Part shown: positions 15,331-43,273 of the stretch, piece by piece | Layout: each line of letters begins with the position of its first letter | Position numbering within the stretch: the stretch's first letter is position 1 | Source: Setoptus koraiensis | Lineage: Eukaryota > Animalia > Arthropoda | NCBI GenBank assembly: GCA_048013815.1 | Contig: CM106585.1 | Location: forward strand, 4,216,001-4,280,000 | Length of the DNA stretch: 64,000 nucleotides | Direction of reading: 5' to 3' | The notes under the pieces: model-generated | Databases searched by the model: none | What the model was told of the DNA's origin: nothing | The model's input: only the letters and a program-made list of their open reading frames with translations | Program-made: the position numbers and the translations under genes

Positions 15331-15766
15331 ATAAATATACTGAAAACTTATCTACATATCCATTAATAAATGACTATGATTAACTAATTAACAATCCCCC
15401 GACCGACAATTGATGATACAAGTATAGAAAAAAAAATCACAAATCCATTCAATTCTCGCGCCATAGCAATCACAGTCTCGAGAATCGCCTTTATTTGTTT
15501 TTTTTTGTGTTTACATTAATAGTGCACGTGTTGAAAAAAAATAAATTCAAGTTATTTTTATTCCATTATCAATCATGCATATTTCAAAAATCTTCTATTA
15601 TGACATTATAAGGGGAACTGTATTGTTGTAAATATGTTCCTAACCAATTGAATGTATGACACTTCGACATAAACATACCGTTAAGATCTACTTCCATGAA
15701 AGGAACTGATAAATATTGTACAAATAATTATTTCAGGTTACTAAGAAGACACCATCCTAATCCAAA

Positions 15767-18700
15767 ATGTCATCTTCCGGTGAAGTTTACGGGATGCACC
15801 TTATGCCTGACTGTTTCAATACTGACGTCTTGCTGCCAAATGGGCTCATTCTTACGGTGCCATGCAAACGAGAGGACACCCTGGAGCACGTAAAAAAACA
15901 ATTATGGAAGATGATTGACGAATCATTTGCTAGATATTTTGGTTTCGGCGACCAATCATCCTTTATTTTTGTTGCTGTAACATTGGATGCTAAGCTCGAA
16001 GAATTCTATGAGGAATCTAGAAGATTGTGCGATCTTAGGTTGTTTGACCTAACATTGAAACTGGTTGAACCTGCTGGTAACAAAGAAGAGAAACGACTCA
16101 GTAGCATGATTGACTTAGCTATCGGCAAAAAAATCAATGATCTTTATTTGGAGTTACCAAGAGAAATAAAGGAAGAGGTTCACGACTTTAGACAACGGCA
16201 CTCCGATCGCAGGGACTCATTTACACAGCAAATCGACCAAGGAGTTTTTTACTCTTCATACAGCAACATGGTTGACATAGAATATAAAATTAAGATCATA
16301 TCGGCCACCTATGTCAATGTGAAACAAGTGGACGCCTTATTTGTAAAAGTTTCAGTGTACCATGGGACAGAGTGTATATGTCAGCGCGAATCTAATCATG
16401 TTGAACCAACGAATCCAAAATGGGATCAATGGATAACATTTGATTTTCGCTGTACTGACCTTCCAAGAAGTGCGAAATTGTGCCTTTCAATATGTGTTGT
16501 CAGTCGTAAACGAAGAAATGAGAAAGTGGCCATAGCCTGGGGAAATACAACCCTCTTCGACTATAGAGGTTTCTTAAAATCTGGTCGATGTCAATTAAGT
16601 CTTTGGCCTACCCCAAAAGATAGTGAGGAACTACTGTTTCCCCTCGGAACTTTAGGAAGCAATCCAAGCCATGATTCACCCTGCCTACTTTTTGAATTTT
16701 TAAGCTTTGATCGAAATGTGGTTTTTGCACCAGAGCGAGACATATACTTTTATGCTGCGCATTCACTTAAGCAGGAAAATCTCGCAAACTACTCCGATAT
16801 AGTCATGCCGCCTCACCTAAGTGTGGCCCCACACACTGTTGATGCTAGCAATGCGTGTAACAATTACTCTAGTATTCAACATGTAATACGTGAAAGAACA
16901 CCCAGTAATAGTTGTGCAGACACTAGAGCCTTTATTGAAAGAAGGCTTTCCGCTTCGTCAAGTAGAAGAGATTCGGTGAGCACGACCTATGTTGAACCTT
17001 CATTGCCCCATCCACGATCGCGGCCATCGTCGACCTCAGCTGAGAAATACTCCGCAACCTCATCGAGAACGTCATCCACATCATCCATGTTGAATAGAAT
17101 GGACAGCAAGGTGGACACATATTTGCGTAGGGGCTCCAACAGCGCTGCATTCTATACTAATACAGTTAATCAATCCTCGCCTATGATGCCAGTATCTCCA
17201 CCGATTGTTAATCAACAAACAAATGCTTCGCCATCACCATCCCACAATCAACTACCTGCAAGACAGCTAGACAGTGCAGATAGTTCTAATAATCCATGTC
17301 AAAACTTGAGTGATTCTGACGACACATCAATCGTTGATGAACTTATCTCTGGACCACCTTACATGACTCTGGAGCCTAAGCAACGTGATATCTTGTGGAG
17401 TATGCGTTTCTATTGTAAGAAACAGCCAACTTCATTGCCTAAACTGTTGGACTCAATTGATTGGAAAAGACGTGATCAGCTGAGTCAGTTATACGTCCTT
17501 CTAGACGAATGGCAGCCCGTCTCCTCAGAGACAGCTCTGAGGTTACTCGATGTCAAATATGAAGATATAGAAGTGAGGAAGCACGCCGTCAAATGGTTGG
17601 ATGCTGACCTCGACGAGGATCAACTTTCTTGTTATCTTCTGCAACTAGTTCAAGTTCTTAAAACAGAGCCACATCTTGACAATTCTTTATCTGACTTTTT
17701 AATCAATCGTGCGCTATTAAATCCTGCCATTGGTAATCTATTATTTTGGTATTTGAAATCAGAATGCGACGAGATGAATGACTTTTACAACACAATCCGA
17801 TTCCGTTATCTACTAGAGAGATATCTTCGTGGTTTGAGCGAACGTAGCCTGACTGTTTTGGTACGCCAAGTTCAAGGATTAGATAAGATAATGAATTTAG
17901 CCGAGCATCTAAAAGAGAGGAATAAAGATAAAGAAGCTGAACGTATAAAGTTTTTACAGACTCAAATACAAAGGGTGGATTTCGCTGACATGTTGCAAAA
18001 CATGCCTGATCCAACTAATCACAATCGTTTACTAGGCGAACTAGTTTATGAAGAATGTCGCATTATGGACTCAGCCAAACGACCGTTGTGGCTAGTTTGG
18101 ACCTTGCCTATTGTAGCGGATGGGAGCTATCCATTGAATCCTATGTCTGAAGATGATCTGATCAAATACAGAGCAAGTATAGGCAGAAGAAGTCATAGTC
18201 ATAGCTCTAGTAAAGAATATCCAATGATAAAGGATTTTAAGAATGCATCAAAAAGCATCCAGGAAGAGGATAAAGAGGTCAGTTCCACTTCGACAGATAC
18301 TAATATAAGTGGTGCAGTCAATCTTAATGACAATGATTCGTCACAGTTTTCAAGTTGTTCCTCTGAGATGAAGCTGACATCTGTTGGCTCACCTACAGAA
18401 GATAAAGAAAGTACTCAACGAAACAATACTTCATCACCATCTACTCCGGCGGCTCGTCCTTTGATAGCCACGAGTGCAATTATTTTCAAGAGTGGCGATG
18501 ATCTACGGCAAGACATGCTAACCTTACAAATTATCAGAATTGTAGACTCAATATGGCGCCAAGAGGGCTTAGATATGTGCATGTTGGTTTACACCTGTCT
18601 ATCAACAGGAAAGAATGTTGGTATTATCGAAGTTGTAAATAGAGCAGAGACAATTATGAGTATACAACGCTCTGGTGGAAGGATGGCAGCCATTCAGATA

Positions 18701-19276
18701 GATTCAACACAGCTACACCGTTGGATAAAAGAAAGAAATCAAGGTCATTATGCGGACGCCATTAGACGTTTCACGCACTCATGTGCAGGCTTTAGTGTAC
18801 TAACTTTTGTTTTAGGTATAGCCGACAGAAACCCAGACAATATTATGGTCAGCGAAGATGGACGAATATTCCATATTGATTTTGGGCATTTTTTGGGTCA
18901 TTACAAGAAGAAGTTTGGTATAAATCGTGAGAGGGTACCATTTGTTCTTACTGACGACTTTTTGCATGTCATAGCCCACGGAGAAGATTTCAGGAAGAGC
19001 GATGATTTTTTTAAGTTTCGTCAACTTTGTGGAGACGCTTATGTGACACTGCGAAAACATTCAAATCTACTTATAACTCTTTTCACTATGATGTTGAGAA
19101 CAGGTATACCTGAGCTGCGTACCTTGAATGACATATCCTATTTGAAGACCACTTTACAGGTAGGATTTTCGGAGCAAAAGGCTAGAGAATTTTTCCAGAC
19201 TCAGTTCTTTGAGGCCTACTGTGGTGCTTGGGCTACTAAAGTTGATTGGTTCTTTCATCACATGAAACGACATTGA
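15767..19276 (+). CDS. PIK3CA: Class I phosphoinositide 3-kinase catalytic subunit, p110alpha-like; lacks the RBD; intronless
   Basis: ABD (SGEVYGMHLMP...LLPNG...RRLCDLRLF), C2 (KIISATYVNV...DLPRSAKLCLSIC), helical domain (QLVQVLKTEP), kinase (MDSAKRPLWL, FKSGDDLRQDMLTLQ, HIDFGHFLG, RERVPF) and C-terminal WATKVDWFFH. Confidence 0.95.
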   Translation: MSSSGEVYGMHLMPDCFNTDVLLPNGLILTVPCKREDTLEHVKKQLWKMIDESFARYFGFGDQSSFIFVAVTLDAKLEEFYEESRRLCDLRLFDLTLKLVEPAGNKEEKRLSSMIDLAIGKKINDLYLELPREIKEEVHDFRQRHSDRRDSFTQQIDQGVFYSSYSNMVDIEYKIKIISATYVNVKQVDALFVKVSVYHGTECICQRESNHVEPTNPKWDQWITFDFRCTDLPRSAKLCLSICVVSRKRRNEKVAIAWGNTTLFDYRGFLKSGRCQLSLWPTPKDSEELLFPLGTLGSNPSHDSPCLLFEFLSFDRNVVFAPERDIYFYAAHSLKQENLANYSDIVMPPHLSVAPHTVDASNACNNYSSIQHVIRERTPSNSCADTRAFIERRLSASSSRRDSVSTTYVEPSLPHPRSRPSSTSAEKYSATSSRTSSTSSMLNRMDSKVDTYLRRGSNSAAFYTNTVNQSSPMMPVSPPIVNQQTNASPSPSHNQLPARQLDSADSSNNPCQNLSDSDDTSIVDELISGPPYMTLEPKQRDILWSMRFYCKKQPTSLPKLLDSIDWKRRDQLSQLYVLLDEWQPVSSETALRLLDVKYEDIEVRKHAVKWLDADLDEDQLSCYLLQLVQVLKTEPHLDNSLSDFLINRALLNPAIGNLLFWYLKSECDEMNDFYNTIRFRYLLERYLRGLSERSLTVLVRQVQGLDKIMNLAEHLKERNKDKEAERIKFLQTQIQRVDFADMLQNMPDPTNHNRLLGELVYEECRIMDSAKRPLWLVWTLPIVADGSYPLNPMSEDDLIKYRASIGRRSHSHSSSKEYPMIKDFKNASKSIQEEDKEVSSTSTDTNISGAVNLNDNDSSQFSSCSSEMKLTSVGSPTEDKESTQRNNTSSPSTPAARPLIATSAIIFKSGDDLRQDMLTLQIIRIVDSIWRQEGLDMCMLVYTCLSTGKNVGIIEVVNRAETIMSIQRSGGRMAAIQIDSTQLHRWIKERNQGHYADAIRRFTHSCAGFSVLTFVLGIADRNPDNIMVSEDGRIFHIDFGHFLGHYKKKFGINRERVPFVLTDDFLHVIAHGEDFRKSDDFFKFRQLCGDAYVTLRKHSNLLITLFTMMLRTGIPELRTLNDISYLKTTLQVGFSEQKAREFFQTQFFEAYCGAWATKVDWFFHHMKRH

Positions 19277-19572
19277 TTAATTAACGTTACAACCCATTTG
19301 TTACTGTTAGTGGTCGCAATCAACGATACATCATTTAAATTAAGACCAATTTAATCTAAATATAGGCAAAAAAAGAAAAGATTATATTCCATTTCATTGA
19401 AGATAGGTTGTCTCAACTAAATCTAGTTAACTTTAAATTGTGAAATAAAAAAGTCCACATCTTTTAAGTAGTTTTTCTGCTTTTACTCAATTCATACAAT
19501 TGATAAATTGATCATTGATGGGATCTATTTAATATCTATTAACAATAGCAGGGAAACATAAATTATACAATC

Positions 19573-29344: not shown

Positions 29345-32300
29345 AAATATCACCACTCTAACTAACAATCGTGCAATTAATCGCAAATGAAATAACCGGC
29401 TCATATTTTCCTACGTCGCCCACTAACAACGACAACGACAGCAACAACAAAGCTGCCTATACCAACAAAGCTGCTATATAACGAGATATAAAATGAAATA
29501 AACAAACACACTCACACCAAACATATGATATCATATCGGCATTGCTAATTGTTGTTTAATTCTCGACTTTGTCGTCTTGATTGTGGCAGTTGGAGCGCAA
29601 TGTAGCCCGAGCTAGAGTGGGCAAAATATAGCAACAATTTTGCCGAAACAAGCAACCACTGGCTTATGGCGGCAGCGACGTTACGGCGTTAGGCGGCGGC
29701 TCATGTTGTGGCATGTTGTGGCCAGCAAACAACCTGTTGCGCTTAGTTGCCGGCCAACATGCCACAGTGATGGCAATGGGACAATAATGGCCCGATATAC
29801 GCCGAGTTTATATGACTGTCACATTTATCATGCGTCGCGCATCTTTTATTGGCAGCTCGAGGCGGCCAAAGATGCCGTAATTCATGCCGTTTGGTGTTGG
29901 TGGTATCAGTGCCATCGGCCAATAACTAGCCGCATTGGCGGCCGGCAGCGGACGGCAGCGGATAGCCGCGGATCGCAGCGGATAACAGCGGACAGAGAAA
30001 TTATACATCGACACGAGGCAGGCAGCGTTGCATCGAGCCAACTGGCCGGCTCACATTCGAGCATTCGAGCATTCGAGCATTTGGGCATGGGACGGCTGGC
30101 GAGCATTTGCCGGGGACGAAGCCCGAAAGTGCTGGCGTCACTAGTTGTGCCGGCGACATGGCCTATAGCTACGTAACGATAGTACCATGTAATAGCGCCT
30201 ATTTATAGGCACGCCGTTGTACGCCGTCCTGCGCTGTTACATGGTGTGATGGTCGAGAGTGACCATTGATGAGTTGTTGCGATGATGGCACCATTAGAAA
30301 GTTGTTGCACTTGTTGTGCTGTCAATGGTCAGCTCGTTTTGCGACGGGTTCAAGTTCAAGTTCGAGTTCGAGTTCATGCCAGCTTGGGCCGCTGGCGTGG
30401 TCGCCGAGTAACTGTACATCGTGCCGTTTCGCTTTAGGCTCTAGGCTGCTCCCTGTTCGGGTTCGCGTTCGCTTTGGCGCATCGCATCGCGTTCGGACGG
30501 CCGCGTCGCGTCCGAAGCCGAAGCATGTGCGGCCGATGTATGATAAAGCCGGCCAGGCGGACATAGAGCAAAATAATGGCAGCGACCAAACAAGTGCATT
30601 TGCTGCTAAAAAAGCAGCCATTTATGGCGGATTTGGATGTTTGGGCAGCAGAAGAATGCGCCGGCGCGTTTATTTACAAGGCCGGCCAGCCTTGTGAGAG
30701 CCGGCAAGTGCAGCAAGTGTTCGTACGAGAGTTAAATATAACGCCAGCAGTGGCCAGCAAACAGACAGCCAACAAAGAGTAACGGACAGCGTTGGCCAAA
30801 TTGCCTTTGTCCACGGTCGCTTGCTCGTAAATTGTTGCTTCGGCAGCTTTGTGGCGCTGCCATTCTTTTTGCGCCATGCGGAATGGTTCGCTCGAGCTTC
30901 TCCGGCTTCTCTGGCTTCTCTGAGACGGGGCAGACAAGTCGGAGAAGGCGCAGAGAAGGGGCAGAGAACGCGCGCAGGGCAGCGAACGATTCGCGCGATT
31001 TCGCCGCGTTGAGCCGCGCTGAGCCACGGTGGCCGGTAGTCGGTGCGGCGCGAGTAACGGGCCAACGCGGCCGACTCAGCCGAGAGAAGCGCCAGAGAGG
31101 GCGAGAGAGCGGGCAAAAGAGCGCCGGCCAAACGCGAAATTCCGAGCGAGAAGACGGACGCGCTGCTATAATTTAGTGCTGGCTGTATCATCATTATCGT
31201 AAAAAAGAGAGAGAGAGAGCAGCAAAATATTCAATCAACTGGGAGCGCCGGTTCGACGACCTCTGGCCGAGCACGCCGTCAAGTGGCCGCGTCCCCCCGG
31301 AGCGGCCATCTCTGGCTAGGCCAATTCATGCGCCGCTGTCCGACACATAACGGCGATGCCAGCGAGAGTGAAGCGTCAGTAAGTGAGAGTAACAGTTGAA
31401 TCGATCGCACCGGATCGCGCCGGATCACACCGGACCGGACCGAATTGCGCCGCGCTGCGCCGGACCGGCCGACCGAGCGTTACTATTATTGGCATATACA
31501 ATGTATACCGCGGTGTCGTCCGCGAGCGGAAACAACAAGTTTGCTCCAATGGCCACTATTATGCAAATAGCGTCAACATGTGAGAGCGCCGATGCGCCCG
31601 TGCTACCCGTTAACCGGCCCAAAATAGTGTTCCTGTTGGCCGCTTCCTATCGGCCCTTCCGTTCAGTTGCTATTTTTAACATTTTGCATTCGGGGTTTGG
31701 CCGCCGCTGGCCACTGTTTGCGTCTTGCGTCGACCGGCGCACTGCGCCCCATTGTTGCCGCTAGACCGGGCAGCGACCCGGCGGTTACAGCGGCAGCGAC
31801 ACCGGCAGCGACACCGGCAGCCACATCGGCAGTGACACTAGCGGGGCCGAGTCACCGTTAGCGCCGGCCCGGTCTCGACCGATCATCTCCTTCCGATGCG
31901 CGTCGCGCGACCGTTGCCCTCGGATGGCCGCTCGAACCCGTGCCGCACGGGCCGTGCGAGCCTTTCAACAAGTTCACCAGTTGAGCGGCTCATCTGCTTA
32001 GCATGTGTGCCGCCTGTGCGCCGGTCGACTGTTCGGCTGGGCGACGCGCCAACAGCAGAACCCAGTGACGGGGCCCGACGACGGAGCCCGATGACGGCGC
32101 CCGATGACGGAACCCGCCGGACTAGACGGGTACGTGGCGAATCGCAGCGAATTGCTGTCACAATTGTCGAATGTCAATTGCGACGGGCTCACGGGCCGGC
32201 CAATTGGTCAGCCGGGCGACGGGCGACTTTTGATTGCAGCCGCTGTGCCGGTGCCGTGCTCGTCGTGCTTGCCGACAAGATCCAGTCTATTTTTCGAATC

Positions 32301-35242
32301 ATTATTTTCACGAAATCGACTGAGATCCGCTGAAAAATCATCTGAAAAATCGTCGCGGCAAAAAAGCTCGCAGCGCGCCTATTTCTGGTGCATTGGCTAA
32401 AAATTACCATTGGCTGCATGGCTAAAAATTGCCATTGATCACGCTACCCGTTAACAGTTGTCGGCCCACTGGCTGTTTCCGATTTTCGGCTCTTCTGTTG
32501 GGGCCAGTGTTGGCCCCTTCCGCTTACCTTTGCTCACTCACTACATTGTGTTTGATTTAACAGACACAGGGCCCAGAGTGCGTGCGCTTGCGTGATACAA
32601 ACATATACATATTATATTTTTGTATATATTTTATATGTTGCATCGGCGGGTTTTGCGTAAGCCGTCGATACAATATACAAGATATAAGGCCGACAACGGC
32701 GCCGCCGTGACGCTGGAAAGTGCATAACTTTCTCCTGTCCGACAAACGCACTCGTTCCTATTTTTGTTTTGTATGCACGTCGCCACGAGATGTTTCGATG
32801 GTTTTATTTTATACGTTTCTCTGTCTCTGGCCGTTTCTGCGTCGCTGGGGCCATTACTGTCGCGGGCATTATGCAGTTGATGATGGTGGCGGCGAATTTC
32901 CACCGAAACAACTGCAGCGACTCCACAAAATACACGCACGTAAAAAAGCCAGCAGCGTGCAAGTCGCTTAGAGAGAGAGAGAGAGTTTTAGAGAGCAAAG
33001 AATTCGCTGCGTTCGGCGTTCTCGGCCGTTCGCCGTCGAACGCTCGCTCCGGCCGCCCTCCGACGCCGCGGCGCTCCGTGCGGCTCAGCGGCGCTGCGGC
33101 GCTGCGGCCGGCGATTTTATAGCTGGCAGACACGTCAGAGTCGCCACCAGCGCCACTTATAATGAGCCGGAGAATATGGCGTAACTCTCTCTTTCGCTAA
33201 TAGTGCCCGCCACGTACCGCGTGCCGCGGCGTTGCGCGTATGCACACGCGCGTATTGCGTCGCGCATACTACGTAGTACATTGTTCATGCCCGCGAACAT
33301 TGTTCGCTGTCGCAATCGCGCAAACAATCTATTCTAATTCCGAGCGCCAATCCTCTTTTTGCGCCGTTGCTGGCCCCTGTGGCCTGGCTCGTGCTGCCGG
33401 CCACTCGTTTTTTGGCCGAGCAGGCGCTCGAGTGACCGACGTGCAGCGCTGGCGCGCGCTGGTTCCGTTCCGGCCAACCGGCCCCGGCTTACGGGGGCCC
33501 ACAGAGCCCAGAACGCGGACCGGCCAGCGGCAAAGAACCCGAGCGTCGCAGAGCCTAGAACCCAAAGGGGCCCAAGAGGCGGACAGAAAGCGGGGCCAGC
33601 CTTGCGAGCGGCCAACGCAGGGCCCAAACCGAGAAGGGGCCAAAAAAGGGCCGAGCAGAAAAAATCGAATCGGTTGCCGCTGGACTGATTACGGAAACCG
33701 GTTATGTGTGACACAGTGGCGACAGTGGCGACATTGGCGACTGTGCCACAGGGCCGCAGTGGGCCCTTTGGGGGCCGCGATGGCGGCGTCGTTTCGCCGC
33801 GCTAACACCATTTGGCGTGTCGGCCGCGCTATTACCCTTGCCCGGCGCGCGCGGCCGCTAACCGTCCGGAGTCCGGACCGACCGGACCGCGGGCCTATAA
33901 TAACGTATATGATATGTAATGCGGCGCTGCCATGCAACACCGGGCAACGGCGCCGCGCCGGCAATCATATCTCGCGCTAACACAGCGATATGTTGCCAGA
34001 GAATGCGTTGTTAGCAGTTGTGCAGTTTGGCGTGGTCAGTTAAAAAGCAACACGACAAAAATGTGTGTCACATAACCAGTCCTGCCCACCGCTGTCGGCC
34101 ACTGCGCTCAACTGACCAAACCCGACTGGTCCGCTGTTGGCGAATCCGCTCAACTGACCGGACCAGTCGGGTTTGGTCAGTTGAGCGCCAATCGGTTAGT
34201 TGTTACGAACTATTACGGATGTGGCCGCTCCTCCGGCGCCATCTGTCCGCTCCTGTCCTGCTGGCCCCGTTCTGCTGGCCCGTCCGCACGGCTCGGCTCG
34301 ATTGGGTTCGGTGGGTCGGGCCGCTGACCAGTCCATCTGTTGGACTGGCCAGCGGTGGTGCGCAAAGGCCGCGGCTCGTTGCAACGACAGGACGCACCGT
34401 AATGGTGCGCCCGTCGTAATTTTGTGCCTCTTTATGCACGAAACAAGTAATGGCAAACACATTGTGTGTGTGTGTGTATTTGTGTACAATGATAAAAATT
34501 TGCATCATCGTTCTCACAGCAACGCCGACGACAACAATGCCACAACAGCGTCGCAATCAATTTGGCGCCCGCTCTGGCCAGCGCCGGCCCGACTAGCCTC
34601 TGGCCGGAGCTGACCAGAGTTACCTCTAGCCGCCCCCAGTTGCCGGCTCGAGACACGCTGGCCGCTGGCGAAGGTTGGGCGCAACAACAATGGCCACCTT
34701 ATGTGTGCCGTCGGCTCGTATGCGGTCGTAGTGGGTCGTATGTGGTTGCAGTTGGTTGTTGGTGTGCAAGCCAAAAACTTGTGTGCCGGTCACTGGTGCC
34801 AATCACGTTGCTTCGGCATGACACTTGGTGTGGGAGTTTTTTTCTCTCGGTTCGCCAGCGCCGCGCCACGCCGCACATTGTGTGTACATTTGATACACAT
34901 TGTTGGGCCGCTTGTTGTCGCTGTTACTGGCCGGTGCTGTTACCCAAGTTATCGCATCGCTTGCTTTCGTTGAACCCAACAATCGTTGGCGTTCCAATCA
35001 TTATTTACTTGTTAACTGTTGTCGTTGGTGTCGTTGTTGTCGTTGTTGGTGCCGCTGTGTCGCTAGCACACCGTTGCTAGGACACCAACTCCATGACCAC
35101 GCCAATCTGCACAAATTGCAATATCGCCAATATCGTCAAACTCACAACTGGCCTCGCAACAGCCTCGTCGGCCAGCTTATCCAGTCGATATCGTCCAACG
35201 ATAATCACACACAAGATATGGACATTCGAGTCCAATGATTGC

Positions 35243-35343
35243 TCGTTGTTGTCGTTGTCGTCGTCGTTGTTGTTGTTGCTGTTGTTGTTGCTGTTGTTGT
35301 TGCTGTTGTTGTTGCTGTTGTTGTTGTTGTTGTTGTTGTTGTT
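35243..35343. repeat. (GTT/GCT/GTC)n trinucleotide microsatellite
   Basis: Seen directly; source of the poly-C/V/L/Q ORFs. Confidence 0.95.
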
Positions 35344-36307
35344 TGCAATTACAATTGGTCGTCATTTGCAGCCTATTGCTCATTGACACGCATGAGGGGC
35401 AACTGCGCATGCGCGCAGCGCTCTAATTGTAGTAATTGTAATTGTTAGTTTGCGCGTTACCTAATCAACGATTATTATTAAATATTGATATTGTATTATG
35501 CGCATATATTAAACAGCTTGCGATTGAACTCGCTGGCCACTGGCCAGTCTGAACAACACAACACAACACAACTCAACACATACACTCATATTTGCATATA
35601 CGTAATATGCATAAATGTCCGAGCAACGAGAGAAACAAGCCGCTCACGTCACACTGTCAATGTGGGTGTGACAGTTGTGAGCTTTACCTTGTGAGCGGCA
35701 TGAGCGGCTCAGGAGGCTGCTGAGTGTAGCGGTCGCAAATTGTGACAAAGTCTGCTCGGCTGCTGAGGCTCAGCACGATGTCAGCACGACGGCAAAGGGT
35801 GAACAGATTGATTGACAGATTGATTGCGATTTGCAACAATCAACAATCAACAATCTACTTGCAAACCGTTGAACTGTTCAACAGAGCTGTTGTTAAACAA
35901 AACCGTGCGTCTCCATGTCCATCGGGTCTGTGTTGATCGCCCACGAGATTAATCAATGAGCCTGGTTGCTGTTGTTGTCGTCACAAGCGACTTTGAGCTG
36001 TTAATTATTTACTATCACCATTTATTATTTACTGTCGTGCTCGCTCACTTGCTGTAAATGTAACTGTAAATCGGCCTGCGACCAACTTACTTGTCAGAGT
36101 CACTTGTCAGAGTCACTCGTTAGACTCGCTCGTTGGCATTCCTTGCACTCGCAATTCGGACGCTTTGCCGGTGCCGCTGCTCGTTACTTGTTAGTTGAGT
36201 GCCGTTGTATTCGGCAAATTACAAGTGTCGAGTGTGCAATTATAGTTTTGCATACTTGTTTCGTACAAAATTCCGTCGTGTCTCTGTCGTGTCTCTATCG
36301 TGTCTCC

Positions 36308-36406
36308 AATAGAGACTCTCTGTCGTGCCTCTAATAGAGACTCTCTGTCGTGCCTCTAATAGAGACTCTCTGTCGTGCCTCTAATAGAGACTCTCTGTCG
36401 TGCCTC
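36308..36406. repeat. 25-bp minisatellite AATAGAGACTCTCTGTCGTGCCTCT x4
   Basis: Units start at 36308, 36333, 36358 and 36383, head-to-tail with no spacers. Confidence 0.95.
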
Positions 36407-39397
36407 GACGGTGTCCATAATCTATAATCTGGCGACGCAAATTGAGCAGTCAAGTGCCGCTCGAGCCCTTCAGCGGCTGGCTGGCACTCGATAGACTGCA
36501 CTTGTTGATGCTGCCGCTAACGGGTTGCCCGTTGCCCGGTACTCGTTACCCGTTAACCGTTACTCAGTCAGCTGTTTCTGGCAGCACAGTTATTGGGGCT
36601 GGTGTGCACATGTCGCGTTGTAGCTGGCCGGTGTGGTCAATGTGCGAGCAGTGTCGCGCACAATGTTCACACCGGCACAGCAATTCACTAATTAATTAAC
36701 CCGATAAAGGCGCGTGTGCGACTGCGCAGCTCGCCATTCACAATGAGCATTGAATTTGAATGGCACTAGGCACAACACATACGCGACATACGATAATTGT
36801 ATTACGATTCGCATGATACGACGACATAAAATGCGCAAAGTGCGTATATAATGATCATATTATGTTGTATTATGATCTGTTTGCGGTGCTGGCCGCCGAC
36901 TCATGTGTCGCCAGCGCAGCAACAGTGCAGCCAGATGACAGCCAGTGACAGTGCACTTGTCATACTATAGCCGCTATAGTATAGCGATACTCTAGTGATA
37001 GCATGGCAATGGCCCAGTGGTGGCGCAGCGATCGCTGCAGCGATAGTTGGCCTTGAATGGGCGACACAAGCTGGCCATCGATCACTTTGTCTAGGGCAGT
37101 TTGGCGAGCCATTTATTGCCATTACACACTGAACATTATCAACTACTGGTATCACGGTGACACATACGCCGCATCGACTGGCGACGGCATGGGCGACACA
37201 CACGCCACACAACGGCACCAGAAGCATGCGACTCTCGGCGGTTAGTCGCTCGCTCGGTTAGCTAGTTGGCCCGTTGGTTGGTTAGTTAGTGCTCAATTGA
37301 GCCGTGATAACTGAACGATAGCGCTCAAATGACGCCCGCTACAACCGGCGCACAATTGTCAATTTGAGTGCGTGGTGCGCAGTGTGCAGTCTTTCGCGCA
37401 CGATGACGCTTACGTAACGCTCACATAGAGCGCACAAACAAACCTCACCAGCCAGCTTGACAATTTTCACGGTCACGCCGCACACACACACACACACGCA
37501 CACACACACACACTCTGTGACACACAGTCTGTGACACGCAGCGCGCAGCGCACAGCGCACACGGCGAGCGCAGTGCGCGGGCACAGCAAGACCGGCCGCT
37601 CATCTATAATGGTCAACGCTATATAGATTTGCGCTAGATTTGCGCTAGATTTGTTTATCTCTTCATCATGGCGAGCGCGTCTTGTTTGGCCATTTGCAGC
37701 GCAACAGTGCCAATTTATCGCCTATCCATCGCGGTTACATATCCCCTGTTACACACCGTGTACACTGTGTGCCCAATGTTGTGTGTCCGCCGCTGCATAG
37801 GCGCTGTTAGGCGACGTTACGCGATGTTATGCGCTGTTGCGCCGACTAGACGCCACTCGGCTTGCTTATTTTTGGCACTATTGGCGCTGTTGGCTGCGAT
37901 TGGCGCTGCCAACGGCCGTCAACATCGGCCAACATTGGCTCTGGCGTCGCTACGAGCGGTTAGTTTTCGCCGCAGCCCGCCAGTGCAAACACACTTGGCT
38001 CAGCCAGCCAAATATCTGCTGCTCGTCGCGATCTCGGCTCCCCGAGGCCGCGTCTGCCATGTTGTTTGAGCCCTCTCCGGCGCTTCTCTGCCGATTCTCG
38101 GCCGCTCCTCGGCCGCTCATCTCTGCGGCGCTCGTCTGTGCGGCCCGGAGTGCTTGTGTGCGCACGCTGCGCCCGCGAACAGTCTACGCAACACAGGGCC
38201 CATATGTGCGATGTGTGCAGCATGCAATAGGCGGCCATTGTTGGCATTGAACTTGTGCACTTGTTCCCGAAAGTGCTCGCTCGGCCGGCCCTCGCGGCCG
38301 CCACGCCGCGCTCATGCAACAACAACAACAAGCTGCAACATCCACACCAACGTCCACAACAGCGGCAACGACAACAACAGCGGCAACGACAACAACAGCG
38401 ACAACGACAACAACAGCAGCAGCAACAACAGCGATAATGATCGCCAGAATGCGCTCATGGCCAACGCGACATTTTGGAGCGGCCCGCTCGGCATGCCCGC
38501 TCGGCCCGCTACTAGTTGTGCACACAAGCGTAGTCACTACTGGCTCTGACTACACTTGTGTGCTGGACAGTTGCGGCTGGTCGCCGCTAGTTGCGGTCGC
38601 CGGTGTCGCGGCGTTCGCGGCGCCCGCTCGGCCAATCAACTGATCGTGGCCAGATAGCGCCCGAGTAGCGGTCTCATGACGCCCGTGCCCGTGAGCCACT
38701 CGCTTGCACTCAAACTCGCACTCACTTGCGCTGGCGCTCACTCTCATGCGACGCGGTCGGTGCGATGCGAGCGCACACGATCCGCTATCGGCCGCCCTCG
38801 TCCGCCATCATGCGCCATCATGCGCCGTCATACGCCGTCATCCGCCGTCATACGCCGTCATGTAGCCGCCCGTTGAATCGTAGCGGGCCAAGATGGCGTA
38901 AATGGCGTAGATGGCCGACGATGGCCGACGAGAGCAGATGAGAGCAGATAAGAGCCAGCGAGAGTGAGAGAGAGAGAGCGCAACAAGCGCGTCGCGTCTT
39001 GCGCGCAAGCAACAGTGAATTGGCAGAGATTATGCGAGTATAGGAACAAAGAGATAACATTTGTTGCACAATATGTTGCTGTTGCGCACTCGGTCGCCGC
39101 TGCACTTGTGCCCGTTGGCCTATAAGCGGCCCGTTGCTCGCTGCACCGCCCAGTTGCCCGTTGCACCGGCCAGTTGCTCGGTGCACAGTTATGCCGGTCG
39201 CACACACACTGCTCGCAATCGCTTGTGCAACGCACCGCCGGCCCGATCGGCCATTAAATCTGGGCACTCGCATTTGCGGGCACTGGCGCGGCCGCGCGGC
39301 CGCGCGGGCGCTCGGTCGCAACGGGCTGCCGGCCGCCGCCGCTCCAATCGACCATTGCGACTGCATCGGCCTTTCTGGCCTCTCTGGCCTTTCTAGC

Positions 39398-39468
39398 GTT
39401 TATGCCGTTGCTGGCGTTTATGCCGTTGCTGGCGTTTATGCCGTTGCTGGCGTTTGTGGCGTTGCTGG
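39398..39468. repeat. 18-bp tandem repeat (GCGTTTATGCCGTTGCTG), about 4 copies
   Basis: Seen directly. Confidence 0.85.
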
Positions 39469-39948
39469 CGGCGCCAGCGGCGCTGCGGACGACACAAGTG
39501 CGCCGGCCGGTGCATAACTGCTGCTGCCGCCGCCGCCCCTGCCAACATAACCAGTGCGCGGCCGGTGCAACCGTGCGGGCAATATAACCGGTGCGGCCGA
39601 TATAACCGGCGCAGGCAACATAACTGTTGCTGCCACCGACGACGCTCAATGGCGAGCGCAGATTCGCTCGCCCGGAGCGGGCCGCCAGAAGGCACAGGGG
39701 GCAGCGAGCAGCAACGAGGAGCGACGATGAGCGGCGAGCGGCAACGGGCAGCAACGAGGAAGAGCGGACCGAACCGGCCGACGGGCGCATCGAGCGGGGG
39801 GCAGCGGGCAGAAAGTAAAATGGGGCAAAAAAGTCGCTGCTCGGTGAGAACGGCACCCGCCACTCGGCGCTGGCCGCCGTCAGCGGCCAGTGGGGGCCGG
39901 CAGCGGCCGAAATGCACCGGCCATGAGAGCCCGCGGACGGATTCACTT

Positions 39949-40022
39949 TGCGGACGAGACTCGGTTGCGGACGAGACTCGGTTGCGGACGAGACTCGGTG
40001 CGGACGAGACTCGGTGCGGACG
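39949..40022. repeat. 16/17-bp tandem repeat (GCGGACGAGACTCGGT[T]), about 4.5 copies
   Basis: Seen directly. Confidence 0.9.
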
Positions 40023-41481
40023 GGCGCCGCTGCACCAGTTGAGCCGGTCGGCGGTGTTGCGCTGATTGCAGCCTGTGCGCGCTGGTGCTGCCGGCGAGGT
40101 CATCGAACTTGGCCCGGCGAGAAGCCCGTGGCCCGCGCTGCAAAATAAATCGCTAAATCGAGGCTCTCGCTGTGTTGTCGTTGTTGATGTTGCTGTTGTT
40201 GCTGCTGTTGTTGCTGTTGCTGTTGGTGAGCTTTTTTGTTGGTGGCGCGCTGGTCAGTGCTGGTCAGTGCTGGTCGGTGCTGGTCAGCGGTGCAGCCACT
40301 ATACAACCGTGCAGCTATACAACCACCGCACCACAACTATGTGCGCTCATTTTACGATTGCTCATCGCCGCCGCTAACTGTTGAGATGATGTTGGCCTTG
40401 AAACGCGCACACACACACACACTCAGTCGCGGATTCCGTTAGTTGCTGACCAGCGCACACACACACACACACACACGCGCGGATCAATTGGGGGCCTTCG
40501 AAAGGCACGCAACGGAGCGAATAGCGGACGGCCGCCAACAGCCGAGCGGCCAATAGCGGCCAGCAGTGGGAACGGACACTCGCTGTTGTTGTTGCTGTCG
40601 TTGTTGGCGTCGTTGTTGCTGCTGCTGTTGCCGTTGTTGGCGTCGTTGCTGCTGTTGTTGCTGTTGTTGTTGCTGTTGCTGCTGTTGTTGCTGGTGGTTC
40701 GGTGCGGCGCGCTGATGCAGCCCAGCTCCGAGTGACTCGCTGCCGATTGGCGCTGATATGTGTGTGCTCTGGCGATGTGTGTGCGAACCGGCAACAGCTA
40801 GCGACCAGCAACAACAGGCTGACAGTGAAAGAAGTTGGCCGAATTCTTCGCTCCTTGGGCCAGTTCTCGCTGACCAGCACTGACCAGCGCCGGCCAGTGG
40901 ATGCCAGTGCCAGCATCGCTGCACCAGGCAACCGGCTCAGACCATCATCATTATCTCGAGCGCCAGGCAGGCGGGCCAAGTTCGATGACCGCTGCTCGAT
41001 GCTATCTCTCCCACAAACGGGCACACACAGAGGTACTGTGCTGGTGCAGTGATTAAACAGGCACTTCGGCCACTGGCCACCCCCGTGCGCAGAACCCAGC
41101 CACGGCGCAACCGGCCCATTGCGATAATCGGCCTGGCGCACACGCCAGCGGGGGCCCGCACTGTCCGAATGTTTGATCACACGATAGCAAATGAGTTGAG
41201 TTGACACACACACACACAAATAACTGTTTTTTACGTTGCTGGCCACTCGTCGTGCCTGGCCTCCTCCTCCGCATCCAGTTATACACGCAGTGTGGTGAAT
41301 GTTGCTGTCGTTGTTGCTGTTGGTTGCTGTTGTTGCTATTGGTCGTTGTTTGCTCGCTGTTGTGCAGCCTTTGCCATGACTGTGTGTCCTGTTACTTTGC
41401 TGCGCCACTCCGGTCAGTCTGCTATGCGCCGCTCTGCTCCGGAGTGCAACTTTGTACTCTATACTTTATGTTTTATACTTT

Positions 41482-41522
<41 letters not shown>

Positions 41523-41534
41523 CACACACACACA
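41482..41534. repeat. (CA)n microsatellite
   Basis: Seen directly. Confidence 0.95.
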
Positions 41535-41968
41535 CGCTGATGCATGAGAGGGCAAATGCAAAAAAGTGCACAAGTAGCAACGCCCTGAGGATCTGGTGCG
41601 CGCATGCGCAGCTCTCTAAATTAGTTGTCGATTGTCAGGGGTGGCTATTAGATCAAATTGAATTGAATTGGATTGGATCGGACTGAACCGGGCCGGAGCG
41701 TAGCGGATTGAATTGAATCGAGCGGCAGCAGCAGCGGCGGCGAATAGCAACTGGACCGATAACTGAACTGGATTGCAAGATTGCGGGATTGCGGGACCGA
41801 ATCGAGTCGAGCAGAGTCGAGTAGAGAAGAGTCGAGTAGAATTGAGTAGAGCAGAGTCGAGTTGAGTAGCAGACGACGACGCGACCATGCGATCCAGTCC
41901 AATCCGATCAGATCAGATATTATGATTATTACGATGGTACGACATGAAACGATACAACGGTGATCCAG

Positions 41969-43273
41969 ATGCTAAAGTATCGCAAACAACAACAACAACA
42001 GGCCCAATCAACAACAACGAGCACGCCAACCACAACAACCATCGCACCAAATGAAACAACGCAACAACAACAACAACAACAACAAACAGCAACCACGCCA
42101 ACAATAATGCGTCCGGACACCAGTTCCCATTCTAGCCCAAATTCAAATTCTAACACCACTAATAGCTCTTCAAATAAATCATCATCCAATGGCAAGCAAT
42201 TCAAGTGTGACATATGCAAACGATCGTTTGGCTACAAGCACGTACTACAAAATCATGCCAGAACTCATACAGGTGAAAAGCCTTTCCAATGTAGAGAATG
42301 TGACAAAAAGTTTACTAGAGATCATCATCTCAAGACCCATATGCGCCTTCATACTGGTGAGAAACCGTTCACGTGCGATCATTGCGACAAACGTTTCGTG
42401 CAAGTGGCCAATTTAAGACGACACACTAGGGTACATACCGGTGAAAGGCCCTATGAATGTGCATTTGTTGATGCTATTAAAAAAGAGAGATGCCTATCGA
42501 AATTTAGTGACTCAAATCAATTAAAGGCACATATGCTAATACATAATAACGAGAAACCATTTCATTGTGTTAAATGCCAAGGCAATTATAGAAGAAAACA
42601 TCATCTTATGTCACACAAATGTCCAGCACACAATTCAAATACCCGAAGAGGTAGAAGGCCAACAGCATATGACACGTTGCCTGCCATTGAGAGCGGCGAA
42701 CCGCCACCAAATTCTAATTCGACAACATCAACGCCAACCTCTGTAACGCCAACCAGCAATGCCAGTATTATTAATATAACAACCCAATCGCAACAACATC
42801 AGCAACAGCAACAACAACAACAACCAAAACGACCTAGACAGTTACATCCTCATCCACATCAACATGCGCATTCACATCCTCATTCACACCCTCATTCAAA
42901 TCACCAAAACAATCAAAATCAGCCTCATCTACATCAGCACCAAATAAAACACGAACACCAGATAAAACACGAGCACAAGCACCTACATCAACACCAATTA
43001 CAATTACAAATTCAACATCAGCATCAACTTCAACATCAGCACCTGCAACAACAACGACACATCCTAAATAGTCCGGTATCATCATATCAAATACCCATTC
43101 AACATCTTCATTCGCCCCAACAGCAACAACCACTCGAACTAACAATGCAATCACCAATATCAGATCAATCTGACGATGACGAAGACGACGATGATCATGA
43201 TAATGACCAACATGACGACGGCGATCATAACGTCGACAAGCATGGCGCGTTGGATCTGTCCATAAAGACATGA
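41969..43273 (+). CDS. Kr: Kruppel gap-gene C2H2 zinc-finger repressor
   Basis: The fingers carry Kruppel-diagnostic sequences: [64 protein letters not shown] and [13 protein letters not shown]-terminal ALDLS resembles the PxDLS CtBP motif. First ATG at 41969; an upstream exon is not excluded. Confidence 0.93.

What the first reader, a model, noticed from the sequence alone, without database searches (positions are those of the whole stretch)
16175..16300. Class I PI3K p110 with the entire Ras-binding domain deleted in frame
Seen: the ABD-linker motif EVHDFRQR (16175-16198) is followed after only about 30 codons by the C2 start YKIKIISATYVNV (about 16283), in one continuous ORF with no intron. 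Known: in p110alpha roughly 190 residues, including the RBD, separate EVQDFRR from LRIKILCATYVNV. The RBD mediates Ras input in all class I PI3Ks, including Drosophila Dp110. Inference: a naturally Ras-uncoupled class I PI3K and rewired insulin/RTK growth signalling, which is of interest in a miniaturised animal.
Basis: partly seen in the sequence, partly recalled or inferred. Interest (0 to 1): 0.72.

Follow-up and report, generated by a model that had tools for sequence, protein, structure and literature searches.

The report
Mite PI3K lacking its Ras-binding domain
A growth-signalling enzyme (class IA PI3K p110) in this tiny mite, and in about 30 related species, has lost the domain through which Ras normally switches it on, yet the gene is intact and under strong purifying selection, so this looks like a natural case of PI3K signalling without direct Ras input.

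Summary
Window 15767-19276 (+) is one intronless 1169-codon ORF encoding a p110alpha-like class IA PI3K. It has the p85-binding, C2, helical and kinase domains. No Ras-binding domain (PF00794) appears even at E<=1.

Residues 3-143 align to human p110alpha 6-141 and residues 168-343 to 329-509. About 185 residues are therefore replaced by 24.

It is not an assembly artefact:
- Contigs from other runs cross the junction without a difference.
- 30 related proteins (62-98% identical) share the same fixed-length junction.
- They form one clade (support 100) inside acariform mites, and every sampled neighbour keeps the domain.

The gene is functional: dN/dS is 0.044 overall and 0.016 in the residual linker, and the catalytic residues are intact. 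AlphaFold2 models the linker confidently as a helix plus an extended segment, not a beta-grasp.

The same clade also:
- lost the helical-domain glutamates (human E542/E545) that dock the adaptor's nSH2;
- gained two disordered inserts, one carrying a conserved Arg/Ser-rich island.

Ras uncoupling itself is inferred. A second paralog in this genome was tested only indirectly. I found no paper describing this.

The parts
15767..19276 (+). Intronless gene for a class IA p110alpha-like PI3K catalytic subunit, 1169 aa plus stop
   Evidence: ORF. Pfam domains. Best PDB match is p110alpha, E 5e-229. Foldseek top hits are all p110alpha. dN/dS is 0.044 against the congener gene L006:6001-9507.
15854..16081 (+). 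Adaptor (p85)-binding domain, aa 30-105
   Evidence: PF02192 E 1e-16. pLDDT 82-94. dN/dS is 0.003 over aa 1-143.
16082..16195 (+). Retained proximal part of the ABD-RBD linker (helices, aa 106-143), ending in the EVxDFR motif
   Evidence: Aligns to p110alpha up to residue 141. Helices 105-119, 123-128 and 132-143 in the model.
16196..16279 (+). Residual 28-residue linker (aa 144-171) standing where about 185 residues, including the RBD, lie in other p110s. The clade motif is QIDQG..SSYS..VDVP.
   Evidence: Fixed length in 28 of 31 clade members, with S163, S164, Y165 and D170 invariant among the 16 aligned. pLDDT 75-97, one helix at 148-157 then extended, no beta-grasp. dN/dS 0.016. hhalign finds no counterpart of the RBD core.
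16280..16699 (+). C2 domain, aa 172-311
   Evidence: PF00792 E 1e-25. Eight strands in the model. Aligns to p110alpha 329-509.
16784..17308 (+). Clade-specific disordered insert 1 in the C2-helical linker, aa 340-514. It holds a conserved Arg/Ser-rich island at aa 362-450 (window 16850-17116).
   Evidence: 186 residues here (clade median 202) against about 19 in other p110s over the same columns. pLDDT below 50 apart from a weak helix at 383-396. The island is at least 70% conserved over 31 species and carries RxRxxS/T and RRxS motifs. dN/dS 0.14.
17312..17845 (+). Helical (PIK) domain, Pfam aa 516-693
   Evidence: PF00613 E 2e-48.
17354..17398 (+). Helical-domain site that docks the adaptor nSH2 in p110alpha (human DPLSEITEQEKDFLW). 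Here E542 is T534, E545 is P537, Q546 is K538 and E547 is Q539.
   Evidence: The motif with both Glu is kept in vertebrates, echinoderms, molluscs, annelids, crustaceans, myriapods, ticks, spiders, Limulus and the oribatid and astigmatid mites sampled. It reads TPPFTPLTxQQK in the clade consensus, and both Glu are lost in all 31 RBD-less proteins.
18116..18460 (+). Clade-specific disordered insert 2 in a kinase N-lobe loop, aa 784-898
   Evidence: 118 residues here (clade median 111) against 7 in other p110s. It is absent in P0002 and P0019 and short in P0025. pLDDT below 50 at 808-894. dN/dS 0.29.
18473..19120 (+). Lipid kinase domain, Pfam aa 903-1118. The catalytic loop DRN is at 18824-18832.
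   Evidence: PF00454 E 2.5e-58. K908, D1020, R1021, N1025 and D1038 are invariant in the 76-sequence alignment. DRN instead of DRH is shared with ticks, spiders, myriapods, Limulus, Daphnia, a copepod and a springtail.

Best explanation
This is the single-copy ortholog of the arthropod class IA PI3K catalytic subunit (p110alpha/Dp110 type). The host is an intron-poor acariform mite lineage, most likely Eriophyoidea. On the stem of that lineage the gene lost, in frame, the distal ABD-RBD linker, the whole Ras-binding domain and most of the RBD-C2 linker. A 28-residue conserved connector remains. The enzyme still has an intact adaptor-binding domain, C2, helical and kinase domains with all catalytic residues, so it most likely still pairs with a p85-type adaptor and makes PIP3 downstream of receptor tyrosine kinases. 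It cannot take the direct GTP-Ras (or Rac/Cdc42) input that the RBD delivers in other class I PI3Ks. The same stem lineage also replaced the helical-domain glutamates that form the inhibitory latch with the adaptor nSH2. It gained a conserved Arg/Ser-rich disordered module between C2 and helical domains, plus a second disordered insert in the kinase N-lobe. The likely working model is therefore an adaptor-dependent but Ras-independent p110, whose inhibition and release have moved from GTPase and nSH2 contacts to phosphorylation-type control of the new insert. Shown here: the deletion, its clade-wide inheritance, purifying selection, the fold, the loss of the nSH2 contact residues, and the inserts. 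Inferred: loss of Ras responsiveness, continued adaptor pairing, phospho-regulation, and the taxon name.
For: No RBD by Pfam at E<=1. The p110alpha alignment skips residues 142-328. All 30 relatives lack PF00794 and every other hit has it. The junction has a fixed length and conserved motif. The RBD-less set is one clade with support 100 and a long stem of 0.67-0.81, nested in Acariformes (100); Trombidiformes, Oppia, Euroglyphus, Dermatophagoides and a six-member unnamed mite group all retain the RBD. Independent contigs are identical across the junction. dS is 0.62 and dN/dS 0.044 overall, 0.003-0.02 in folded domains and 0.016 in the residual linker. The AF2 model has pTM 0.74 with a confident linker and no beta-grasp. 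Foldseek's top matches are all p110alpha. Catalytic residues are invariant. The nSH2-contact Glu pair is lost only in this clade. The inserts are clade-wide and one holds a conserved island. A kinase-domain search shows 31 clade members at 79-98% identity and then a drop to 71% or less, with no parallel set of RBD-bearing paralogs. Intron poverty is visible in five ORFs of 923-1420 aa in the window and long uninterrupted neighbours in relatives. That matches published eriophyoid genomes, where 75-84% of genes are intronless (PMC7738191; bioRxiv 10.64898/2026.08.24.746826).
Against: There is no biochemical evidence on Ras binding. No RNA run was available, so transcription of this gene is not shown here. 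The exact deletion boundaries are ambiguous: MAFFT pairs QIDQG with the KLDKG that precedes RBD strand 1, whereas hhalign pairs the segment with the RBD-C2 linker. The adaptor subunit was not examined here. The taxon name rests on exclusion and genome style, not on a named sequence.
Confidence: 0.85

Rival explanations
1. The organism is not Ras-uncoupled, because a second, RBD-bearing class I PI3K paralog elsewhere in the genome carries the Ras input. This gene would then be a specialised duplicate.
For: A six-member group of RBD-bearing mite p110s (P0083-85, P0090-92) sits in an unresolved three-way split with the RBD-less clade and Sarcoptiformes. Two of them come from the same study series as one RBD-less protein.
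Against: That group has 6 deeply diverged members against 31 for the RBD-less clade. In every look-up the two types came from different samples. Their contigs show split, intron-containing neighbour genes, unlike the intron-poor RBD-less contigs. No other note of a PI3K catalytic gene exists for this genome. From general knowledge, arthropods normally have one class I PI3K.
Confidence: 0.08
2. Ras or another small GTPase still regulates the enzyme through a new surface, for example the conserved island of insert 1 or the adaptor. The input would be relocated rather than lost.
For: Insert 1 contains an island conserved across 31 species despite predicted disorder. From general knowledge, the C2-helical linker is where p110beta takes G-beta-gamma input, so this position can host regulatory contacts.
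Against: Nothing in the inserts resembles a ubiquitin-like RBD/RA fold by Pfam or in the model. The conserved motifs look like basophilic kinase sites, not a GTPase-binding fold.
Confidence: 0.1
3. It is an assembly or annotation artefact: collapsed sequence, a missed exon, or a decaying pseudogene.
For: Only contig-level data, not raw reads, could be laid on the region, and runs X3 and X4 left 15634-17375 uncovered after filtering.
Against: The ORF is continuous. Contigs from two other runs match with zero differences. The same junction occurs in 30 other species assembled independently. dN/dS is 0.044 at dS 0.62. The model is confident across the junction.
Confidence: 0.02

Closest known systems
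Class IA PI3K catalytic subunit p110alpha (PIK3CA) and Drosophila Dp110
   Same: It shares the adaptor-binding domain, C2, helical and kinase domains in the same order. It is 45-53% identical overall to other animal p110alpha-type proteins and matches human p110alpha at E 5e-229. It nests phylogenetically among arthropod orthologs. Catalytic K, DRx..N and DFG are conserved.
   Different: It has no RBD: about 185 residues are replaced by 24-28. The E542/E545-equivalent glutamates are lost. It carries inserts of about 180 and 105 residues in the C2-helical linker and the kinase N-lobe.
Dp110 and p110alpha RBD point mutants (Orme et al. 2006, as cited in PMC3193374)
   Same: These mutants have a class I PI3K deprived of Ras input, and the animals are viable. 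[quoted passage not shown]
   Different: Those are engineered point mutations in an otherwise intact domain. Here the whole domain is deleted naturally, fixed in a whole clade, and accompanied by other regulatory changes.
Class III PI3K Vps34
   Same: It has a C2-helical-kinase core without an RBD (Philippon et al. 2015, PMC4617754).
   Different: Vps34 has no adaptor-binding domain and belongs to a different, ancient paralog group. The mite protein has PF02192 and is p110alpha-type by sequence and tree.

Membership tests
Class IA PI3K catalytic subunit (p110alpha/beta/delta, Dp110) | N-terminal adaptor (p85)-binding domain | tested here: met
   PF02192 at aa 30-105, 60.6 bits against a cutoff of 27. 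It aligns to p110alpha 6-141.
Class IA PI3K catalytic subunit (p110alpha/beta/delta, Dp110) | Ras-binding domain (PF00794) between ABD and C2 | tested here: not met
   No hit at E<=1. Only 24-28 residues are available. The model shows a helix plus extended chain. hhalign finds no RBD-core match. The protein is therefore an ortholog by descent that departs from the canonical five-domain architecture.
Class IA PI3K catalytic subunit (p110alpha/beta/delta, Dp110) | C2, helical (PIK) and PI3/4-kinase domains with catalytic Lys, DRx..N loop and DFG | tested here: met
   PF00792, PF00613 and PF00454 all score above their cutoffs. K908, D1020, R1021, N1025 and D1038 are invariant. The His of DRH is Asn, as in other arthropods.
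Class IA PI3K catalytic subunit (p110alpha/beta/delta, Dp110) | Orthology: nests within animal p110alpha-type sequences | tested here: met
   It lies inside Acariformes (support 100), within arthropods, in two trees that exclude the RBD columns or keep only well-filled columns.
Class IA PI3K catalytic subunit (p110alpha/beta/delta, Dp110) | Helical-domain acidic contact for the adaptor nSH2 (E542/E545 in human) | tested here: not met
   T534 and P537 in the window protein. Both Glu are absent in all 31 clade members and present in nearly all other Bilateria sampled.
Class IA PI3K catalytic subunit (p110alpha/beta/delta, Dp110) | Heterodimer with a p85-type adaptor; PIP2 to PIP3 activity; stimulation by Ras-GTP | not testable with these tools
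   This needs biochemistry. An unchecked note (s1-303189) reports an adaptor with iSH2 and cSH2 but no nSH2 elsewhere in this genome.

The most novel reading that the evidence does not exclude
A whole superfamily of minute plant-feeding mites runs insulin/RTK-PI3K signalling with a p110 that has neither Ras input nor the nSH2 latch, and this changed together with an adaptor that lost its nSH2. Control has passed to a new, conserved, phosphorylatable disordered module. Because removing Ras input from Dp110 lowers maximal PI3K output in flies, this permanent loss may be one of the genetic changes behind extreme body-size reduction. The in-frame excision may have arisen during the cDNA-mediated intron purge of this lineage.
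Probability: 0.3. Interest if true: 0.78.

Novelty: new variant of a known kind. Interest (0 to 1): 0.62.

Why it matters
The RBD is treated as a constant of class I and class II PI3Ks; Philippon et al. 2015 (PMC4617754) list it in all of them. Ras-to-PI3K coupling is a central theme in growth control and cancer. A lineage of many species has lived for a long time without the domain, with the enzyme under strong constraint. That makes it a natural experiment on what the RBD is needed for, structurally and in signalling, and on how a p110 can be kept inhibited and then activated without the RBD and without the nSH2-helical latch. It also gives a compact, naturally stable RBD-less p110 scaffold for structural work. 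It offers a testable candidate for growth-pathway changes in one of the smallest arthropods. Neither of the two eriophyoid genome papers I read mentions PI3K or Ras.

Tried and rejected
- **Metagenome scan for a paralog.** I scanned with the full alignment hoping to recover every PI3K gene of the metagenome that holds relative P0003.
- **Accession look-ups in papers.** I searched the run, sample and assembly accessions to name the organisms and found nothing.
- **RNA evidence.** No listed run holding the stretch is on record as RNA.
- **Rfam.** The window has no hits, so there is no rRNA to help with taxonomy.
- **Other RBD-less candidates.** P0087 and P0088 lack both ABD and RBD in Pfam, but they are fragments that begin in the tail of an RBD.
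- **DRH to DRN as a sign of a dead kinase.** Rejected, because DRN is arthropod-wide.
- **Inserts as unspliced introns.** Rejected. They stay in frame in about 30 species, show no length difference from the congener at dS of about 0.5, have dN/dS of 0.14 and 0.29, and one holds a conserved island.
- **Sarcoptiformes as the host clade.** Rejected, because Oppia, Euroglyphus and Dermatophagoides p110s keep the RBD and fall outside the clade.
- **The large exhaustive protein search.** Independent RBD losses in other phyla are therefore not excluded beyond the roughly 140 non-clade p110s seen.

Full report
**What is in the sequence.** Window 15767-19276 (+) is one uninterrupted ORF of 1169 codons. 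Pfam finds PI3K_p85B (aa 30-105), PI3K_C2 (190-286), PI3Ka (516-693) and PI3_PI4_kinase (903-1118), all well above their curated cutoffs. It finds no PI3K_rbd even at E<=1. phmmer against all PDB chains gives human p110alpha as best match (E 5e-229) in four blocks: query 3-143 to p110alpha 6-141, 168-343 to 329-509, 525-783 to 533-788, and 899-1169 to 793-1065. So p110alpha 142-328, which contains the RBD, has no counterpart. The protein also carries two large extra segments, about aa 340-514 and 784-898.

**Is it an artefact?** It is not. Logan contigs from other runs were laid on 15500-19500. A 9065-nt contig of run X2 covers the whole stretch with no difference. A 346-nt contig of run X7 (a different organism label and study) covers 16185-16530 with no difference. 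Runs X3 and X4 left part of the gene uncovered, and the tool warns that a filter removes some records, so that gap says nothing either way. All data laid were contigs, not raw reads, and X2 may be the source of this DNA.

The comparative evidence is much stronger. A word-based search with residues 1-340 returned 30 proteins, 62-98% identical, whose precomputed Pfam lists all lack PF00794. Every other full-length hit has it, including ticks, spiders, myriapods, trombidiform mites, molluscs, annelids, echinoderms and fish. The spacing from DFR to ATYV is the same 40 residues in all but one of the clade members that keep both motifs exactly. In the 76-sequence alignment the segment is 30 residues in 28 of the 31 clade members, against a median of 192 in the others. 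The relatives' genes were called as single ORFs on independently assembled contigs from several studies.

**Is the gene alive?** The gene of P0001 (L006:6001-9507) has the same length and dS of 0.62, so it belongs to a different species. Overall dN/dS is 0.044. By region it is:
- ABD and proximal linker: 0.003
- residual linker (aa 144-171): 0.016
- C2: 0.021
- helical: 0.022
- kinase: 0.012
- the two inserts: 0.14 and 0.29

Catalytic K908, D1020, R1021, N1025 and D1038 are invariant in the alignment. But DRN is shared by ticks, spiders, sea spider, myriapods, Limulus, Daphnia, a copepod, a springtail and all mites sampled, so it is an ordinary arthropod trait.

**Is a degenerate RBD hiding?** AlphaFold2 with the 76-sequence alignment gave pTM 0.74 and mean pLDDT 75. 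ABD, C2, helical and kinase domains are confident. Residues 141-170 have pLDDT 75-95 and form a helix at 148-157 followed by an extended segment that leads into C2 strand 1 at 172, so there is no beta-grasp fold. The inserts are disordered (340-381, 397-514 and 808-894 below pLDDT 50) and Pfam sees nothing in them. Foldseek's top PDB matches are all p110alpha. A profile-profile comparison of the clade's residues 100-200 with the ABD-to-C2 region of 18 RBD-bearing p110s aligns only the tail of the RBD-C2 linker and the C2 start; nothing matches the RBD core. MAFFT instead places the clade's conserved QIDQG against the KLDKG that immediately precedes RBD strand 1, and SSYS..VD against SLW.VD before C2. 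The residual linker therefore looks like stitched remnants of the flanks, but the exact boundaries are ambiguous.

**Where did the loss happen?** Two maximum-likelihood trees were built, one excluding the RBD columns and one keeping only columns filled in at least 70% of rows. Both recover the 31 RBD-less proteins as one clade (SH-aLRT 100) on a long stem of 0.67-0.81 substitutions per site, inside Acariformes (99-100). The neighbours all keep the RBD: Trombidiformes (Dinothrombium, Leptotrombidium, Tetranychus, Brevipalpus), Sarcoptiformes (Oppia, Euroglyphus, Dermatophagoides) and an unnamed six-member mite group. One loss on the stem suffices.

The host genome is intron-poor. There are five ORFs of 923-1420 aa in this window and long uninterrupted neighbours in relatives. 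The scan index places this genome's notes on two pieces, one extending more than 15 Mb beyond the window, and another agent calls it a tiny mite genome. With Sarcoptiformes and Trombidiformes excluded, this fits Eriophyoidea, whose published genomes have 75-84% intronless genes (PMC7738191; bioRxiv 10.64898/2026.08.24.746826). The taxon name remains an inference.

**Is there a second, RBD-bearing class I gene?** I could not search the whole genome. The indirect evidence argues against one:
- A kinase-domain search lists the 31 clade proteins at 79-98% identity, then drops to 71% or less. No parallel family of RBD-bearing sequences of similar multiplicity appears.
- The only unnamed mite-like RBD-bearing group has six deeply diverged members. 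It was never found in the same sample as an RBD-less protein.
- That group sits on contigs whose neighbouring genes are split, so those genomes keep introns.
- The scan's notes for this genome list no other PI3K catalytic gene.

**Further rewiring found here.**
- **Helical-domain latch.** The helical-domain motif DPLSE(I/L)(S/T)EQEK contains human E542 and E545. From established knowledge of p110alpha, these are the contact for the inhibitory nSH2 of p85 and the site of hotspot activating mutations. The motif is kept from vertebrates to ticks and in oribatid and astigmatid mites. In the RBD-less clade it reads TPPFTPLTxQQK in the consensus, and both Glu are gone in all 31 members; in the window protein they are T534 and P537.
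- **Adaptor lead.** An unchecked first-reader note (s1-303189) reports that this genome's adaptor has iSH2 and cSH2 but no nSH2. I did not test that, but it would fit.
- **Inserts.** Both inserts are clade-wide. Over the counted columns the C2-helical segment has a median of 202 residues against 19 in other p110s, and the kinase N-lobe loop 111 against 7 (the window protein has 186 and 118). Two sister species lack insert 2 and a third has a short one.
- **Conserved island.** Insert 1 holds an island (aa 362-450) at least 70% conserved across 31 species, rich in RxRxxS/T and RRxS motifs. This suggests regulation by basophilic kinases or 14-3-3 proteins, which is inference.

**Comparison with what is known.** A survey of PI3K evolution lists the RBD in all class I and II catalytic subunits (PMC4617754). 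Text searches for RBD-less PI3Ks in mites found nothing relevant, and the two eriophyoid genome papers do not mention PI3K or Ras. [quoted passage not shown] 2006, as cited in PMC3193374). Ras input therefore tunes the enzyme rather than being essential, which makes a viable natural loss plausible.

The protein is an ortholog of class IA p110 by descent. It fails two regulatory features of the canonical family, the RBD and the nSH2-contact site. I class it as a new variant of a known kind.

**Verdict.** Ras uncoupling, continued adaptor pairing, phospho-control of the insert, the link to miniaturisation and the taxon name are inferences that need the tests listed.

Noticed in passing
window 18824-18832: The catalytic-loop DRH reads DRN (separate first-reader note s1-338198). 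The same DRNPDN is found in ticks, spiders, sea spider, myriapods, Limulus, Daphnia, a copepod, a springtail and all mites sampled, so it is an ordinary arthropod state and not a sign of a dead kinase.
   Followed up: yes
window 17354-17398: The nSH2-docking glutamates of the helical domain (human E542/E545) are replaced in all 31 RBD-less proteins. This fits an unchecked note that this genome's p85-type adaptor lacks its nSH2 (s1-303189, another piece).
   Followed up: partly
window 16850-17116: A conserved Arg/Ser-rich island (RxRxxS/T and RRxS motifs) lies inside an otherwise disordered, clade-specific insert between the C2 and helical domains. It is a candidate new regulatory module.
   Followed up: partly
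window 30000-42000: A GC-rich block (0.51-0.64, against about 0.39 around the PI3K gene) has many short tandem repeats (periods 3-36) and no ORF over 350 aa. Its nature was not examined.
   Followed up: no
L001, L090, L091 versus window and L006: Gene order around the PI3K gene differs within the clade. In three relatives it is LIM_bind, PI3K, then Piwi on the opposite strand. In the window and its congener it is TNPO3, Snu13, PI3K, GIPC1. This is consistent with the poor synteny reported for eriophyoid genomes.
   Followed up: no
P0002, P0019, P0025: Two sister species of the clade lack the kinase N-lobe insert entirely (5-7 residues, as in canonical p110), and a third has only 35 residues. 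That insert is therefore dispensable or was secondarily lost.
   Followed up: no
P0124, P0125 (Dermatophagoides): Dust-mite p110-type proteins are annotated at 1794-1865 aa without a Pfam p85B hit. This may reflect fused gene models or a real N-terminal change. It was not examined.
   Followed up: no
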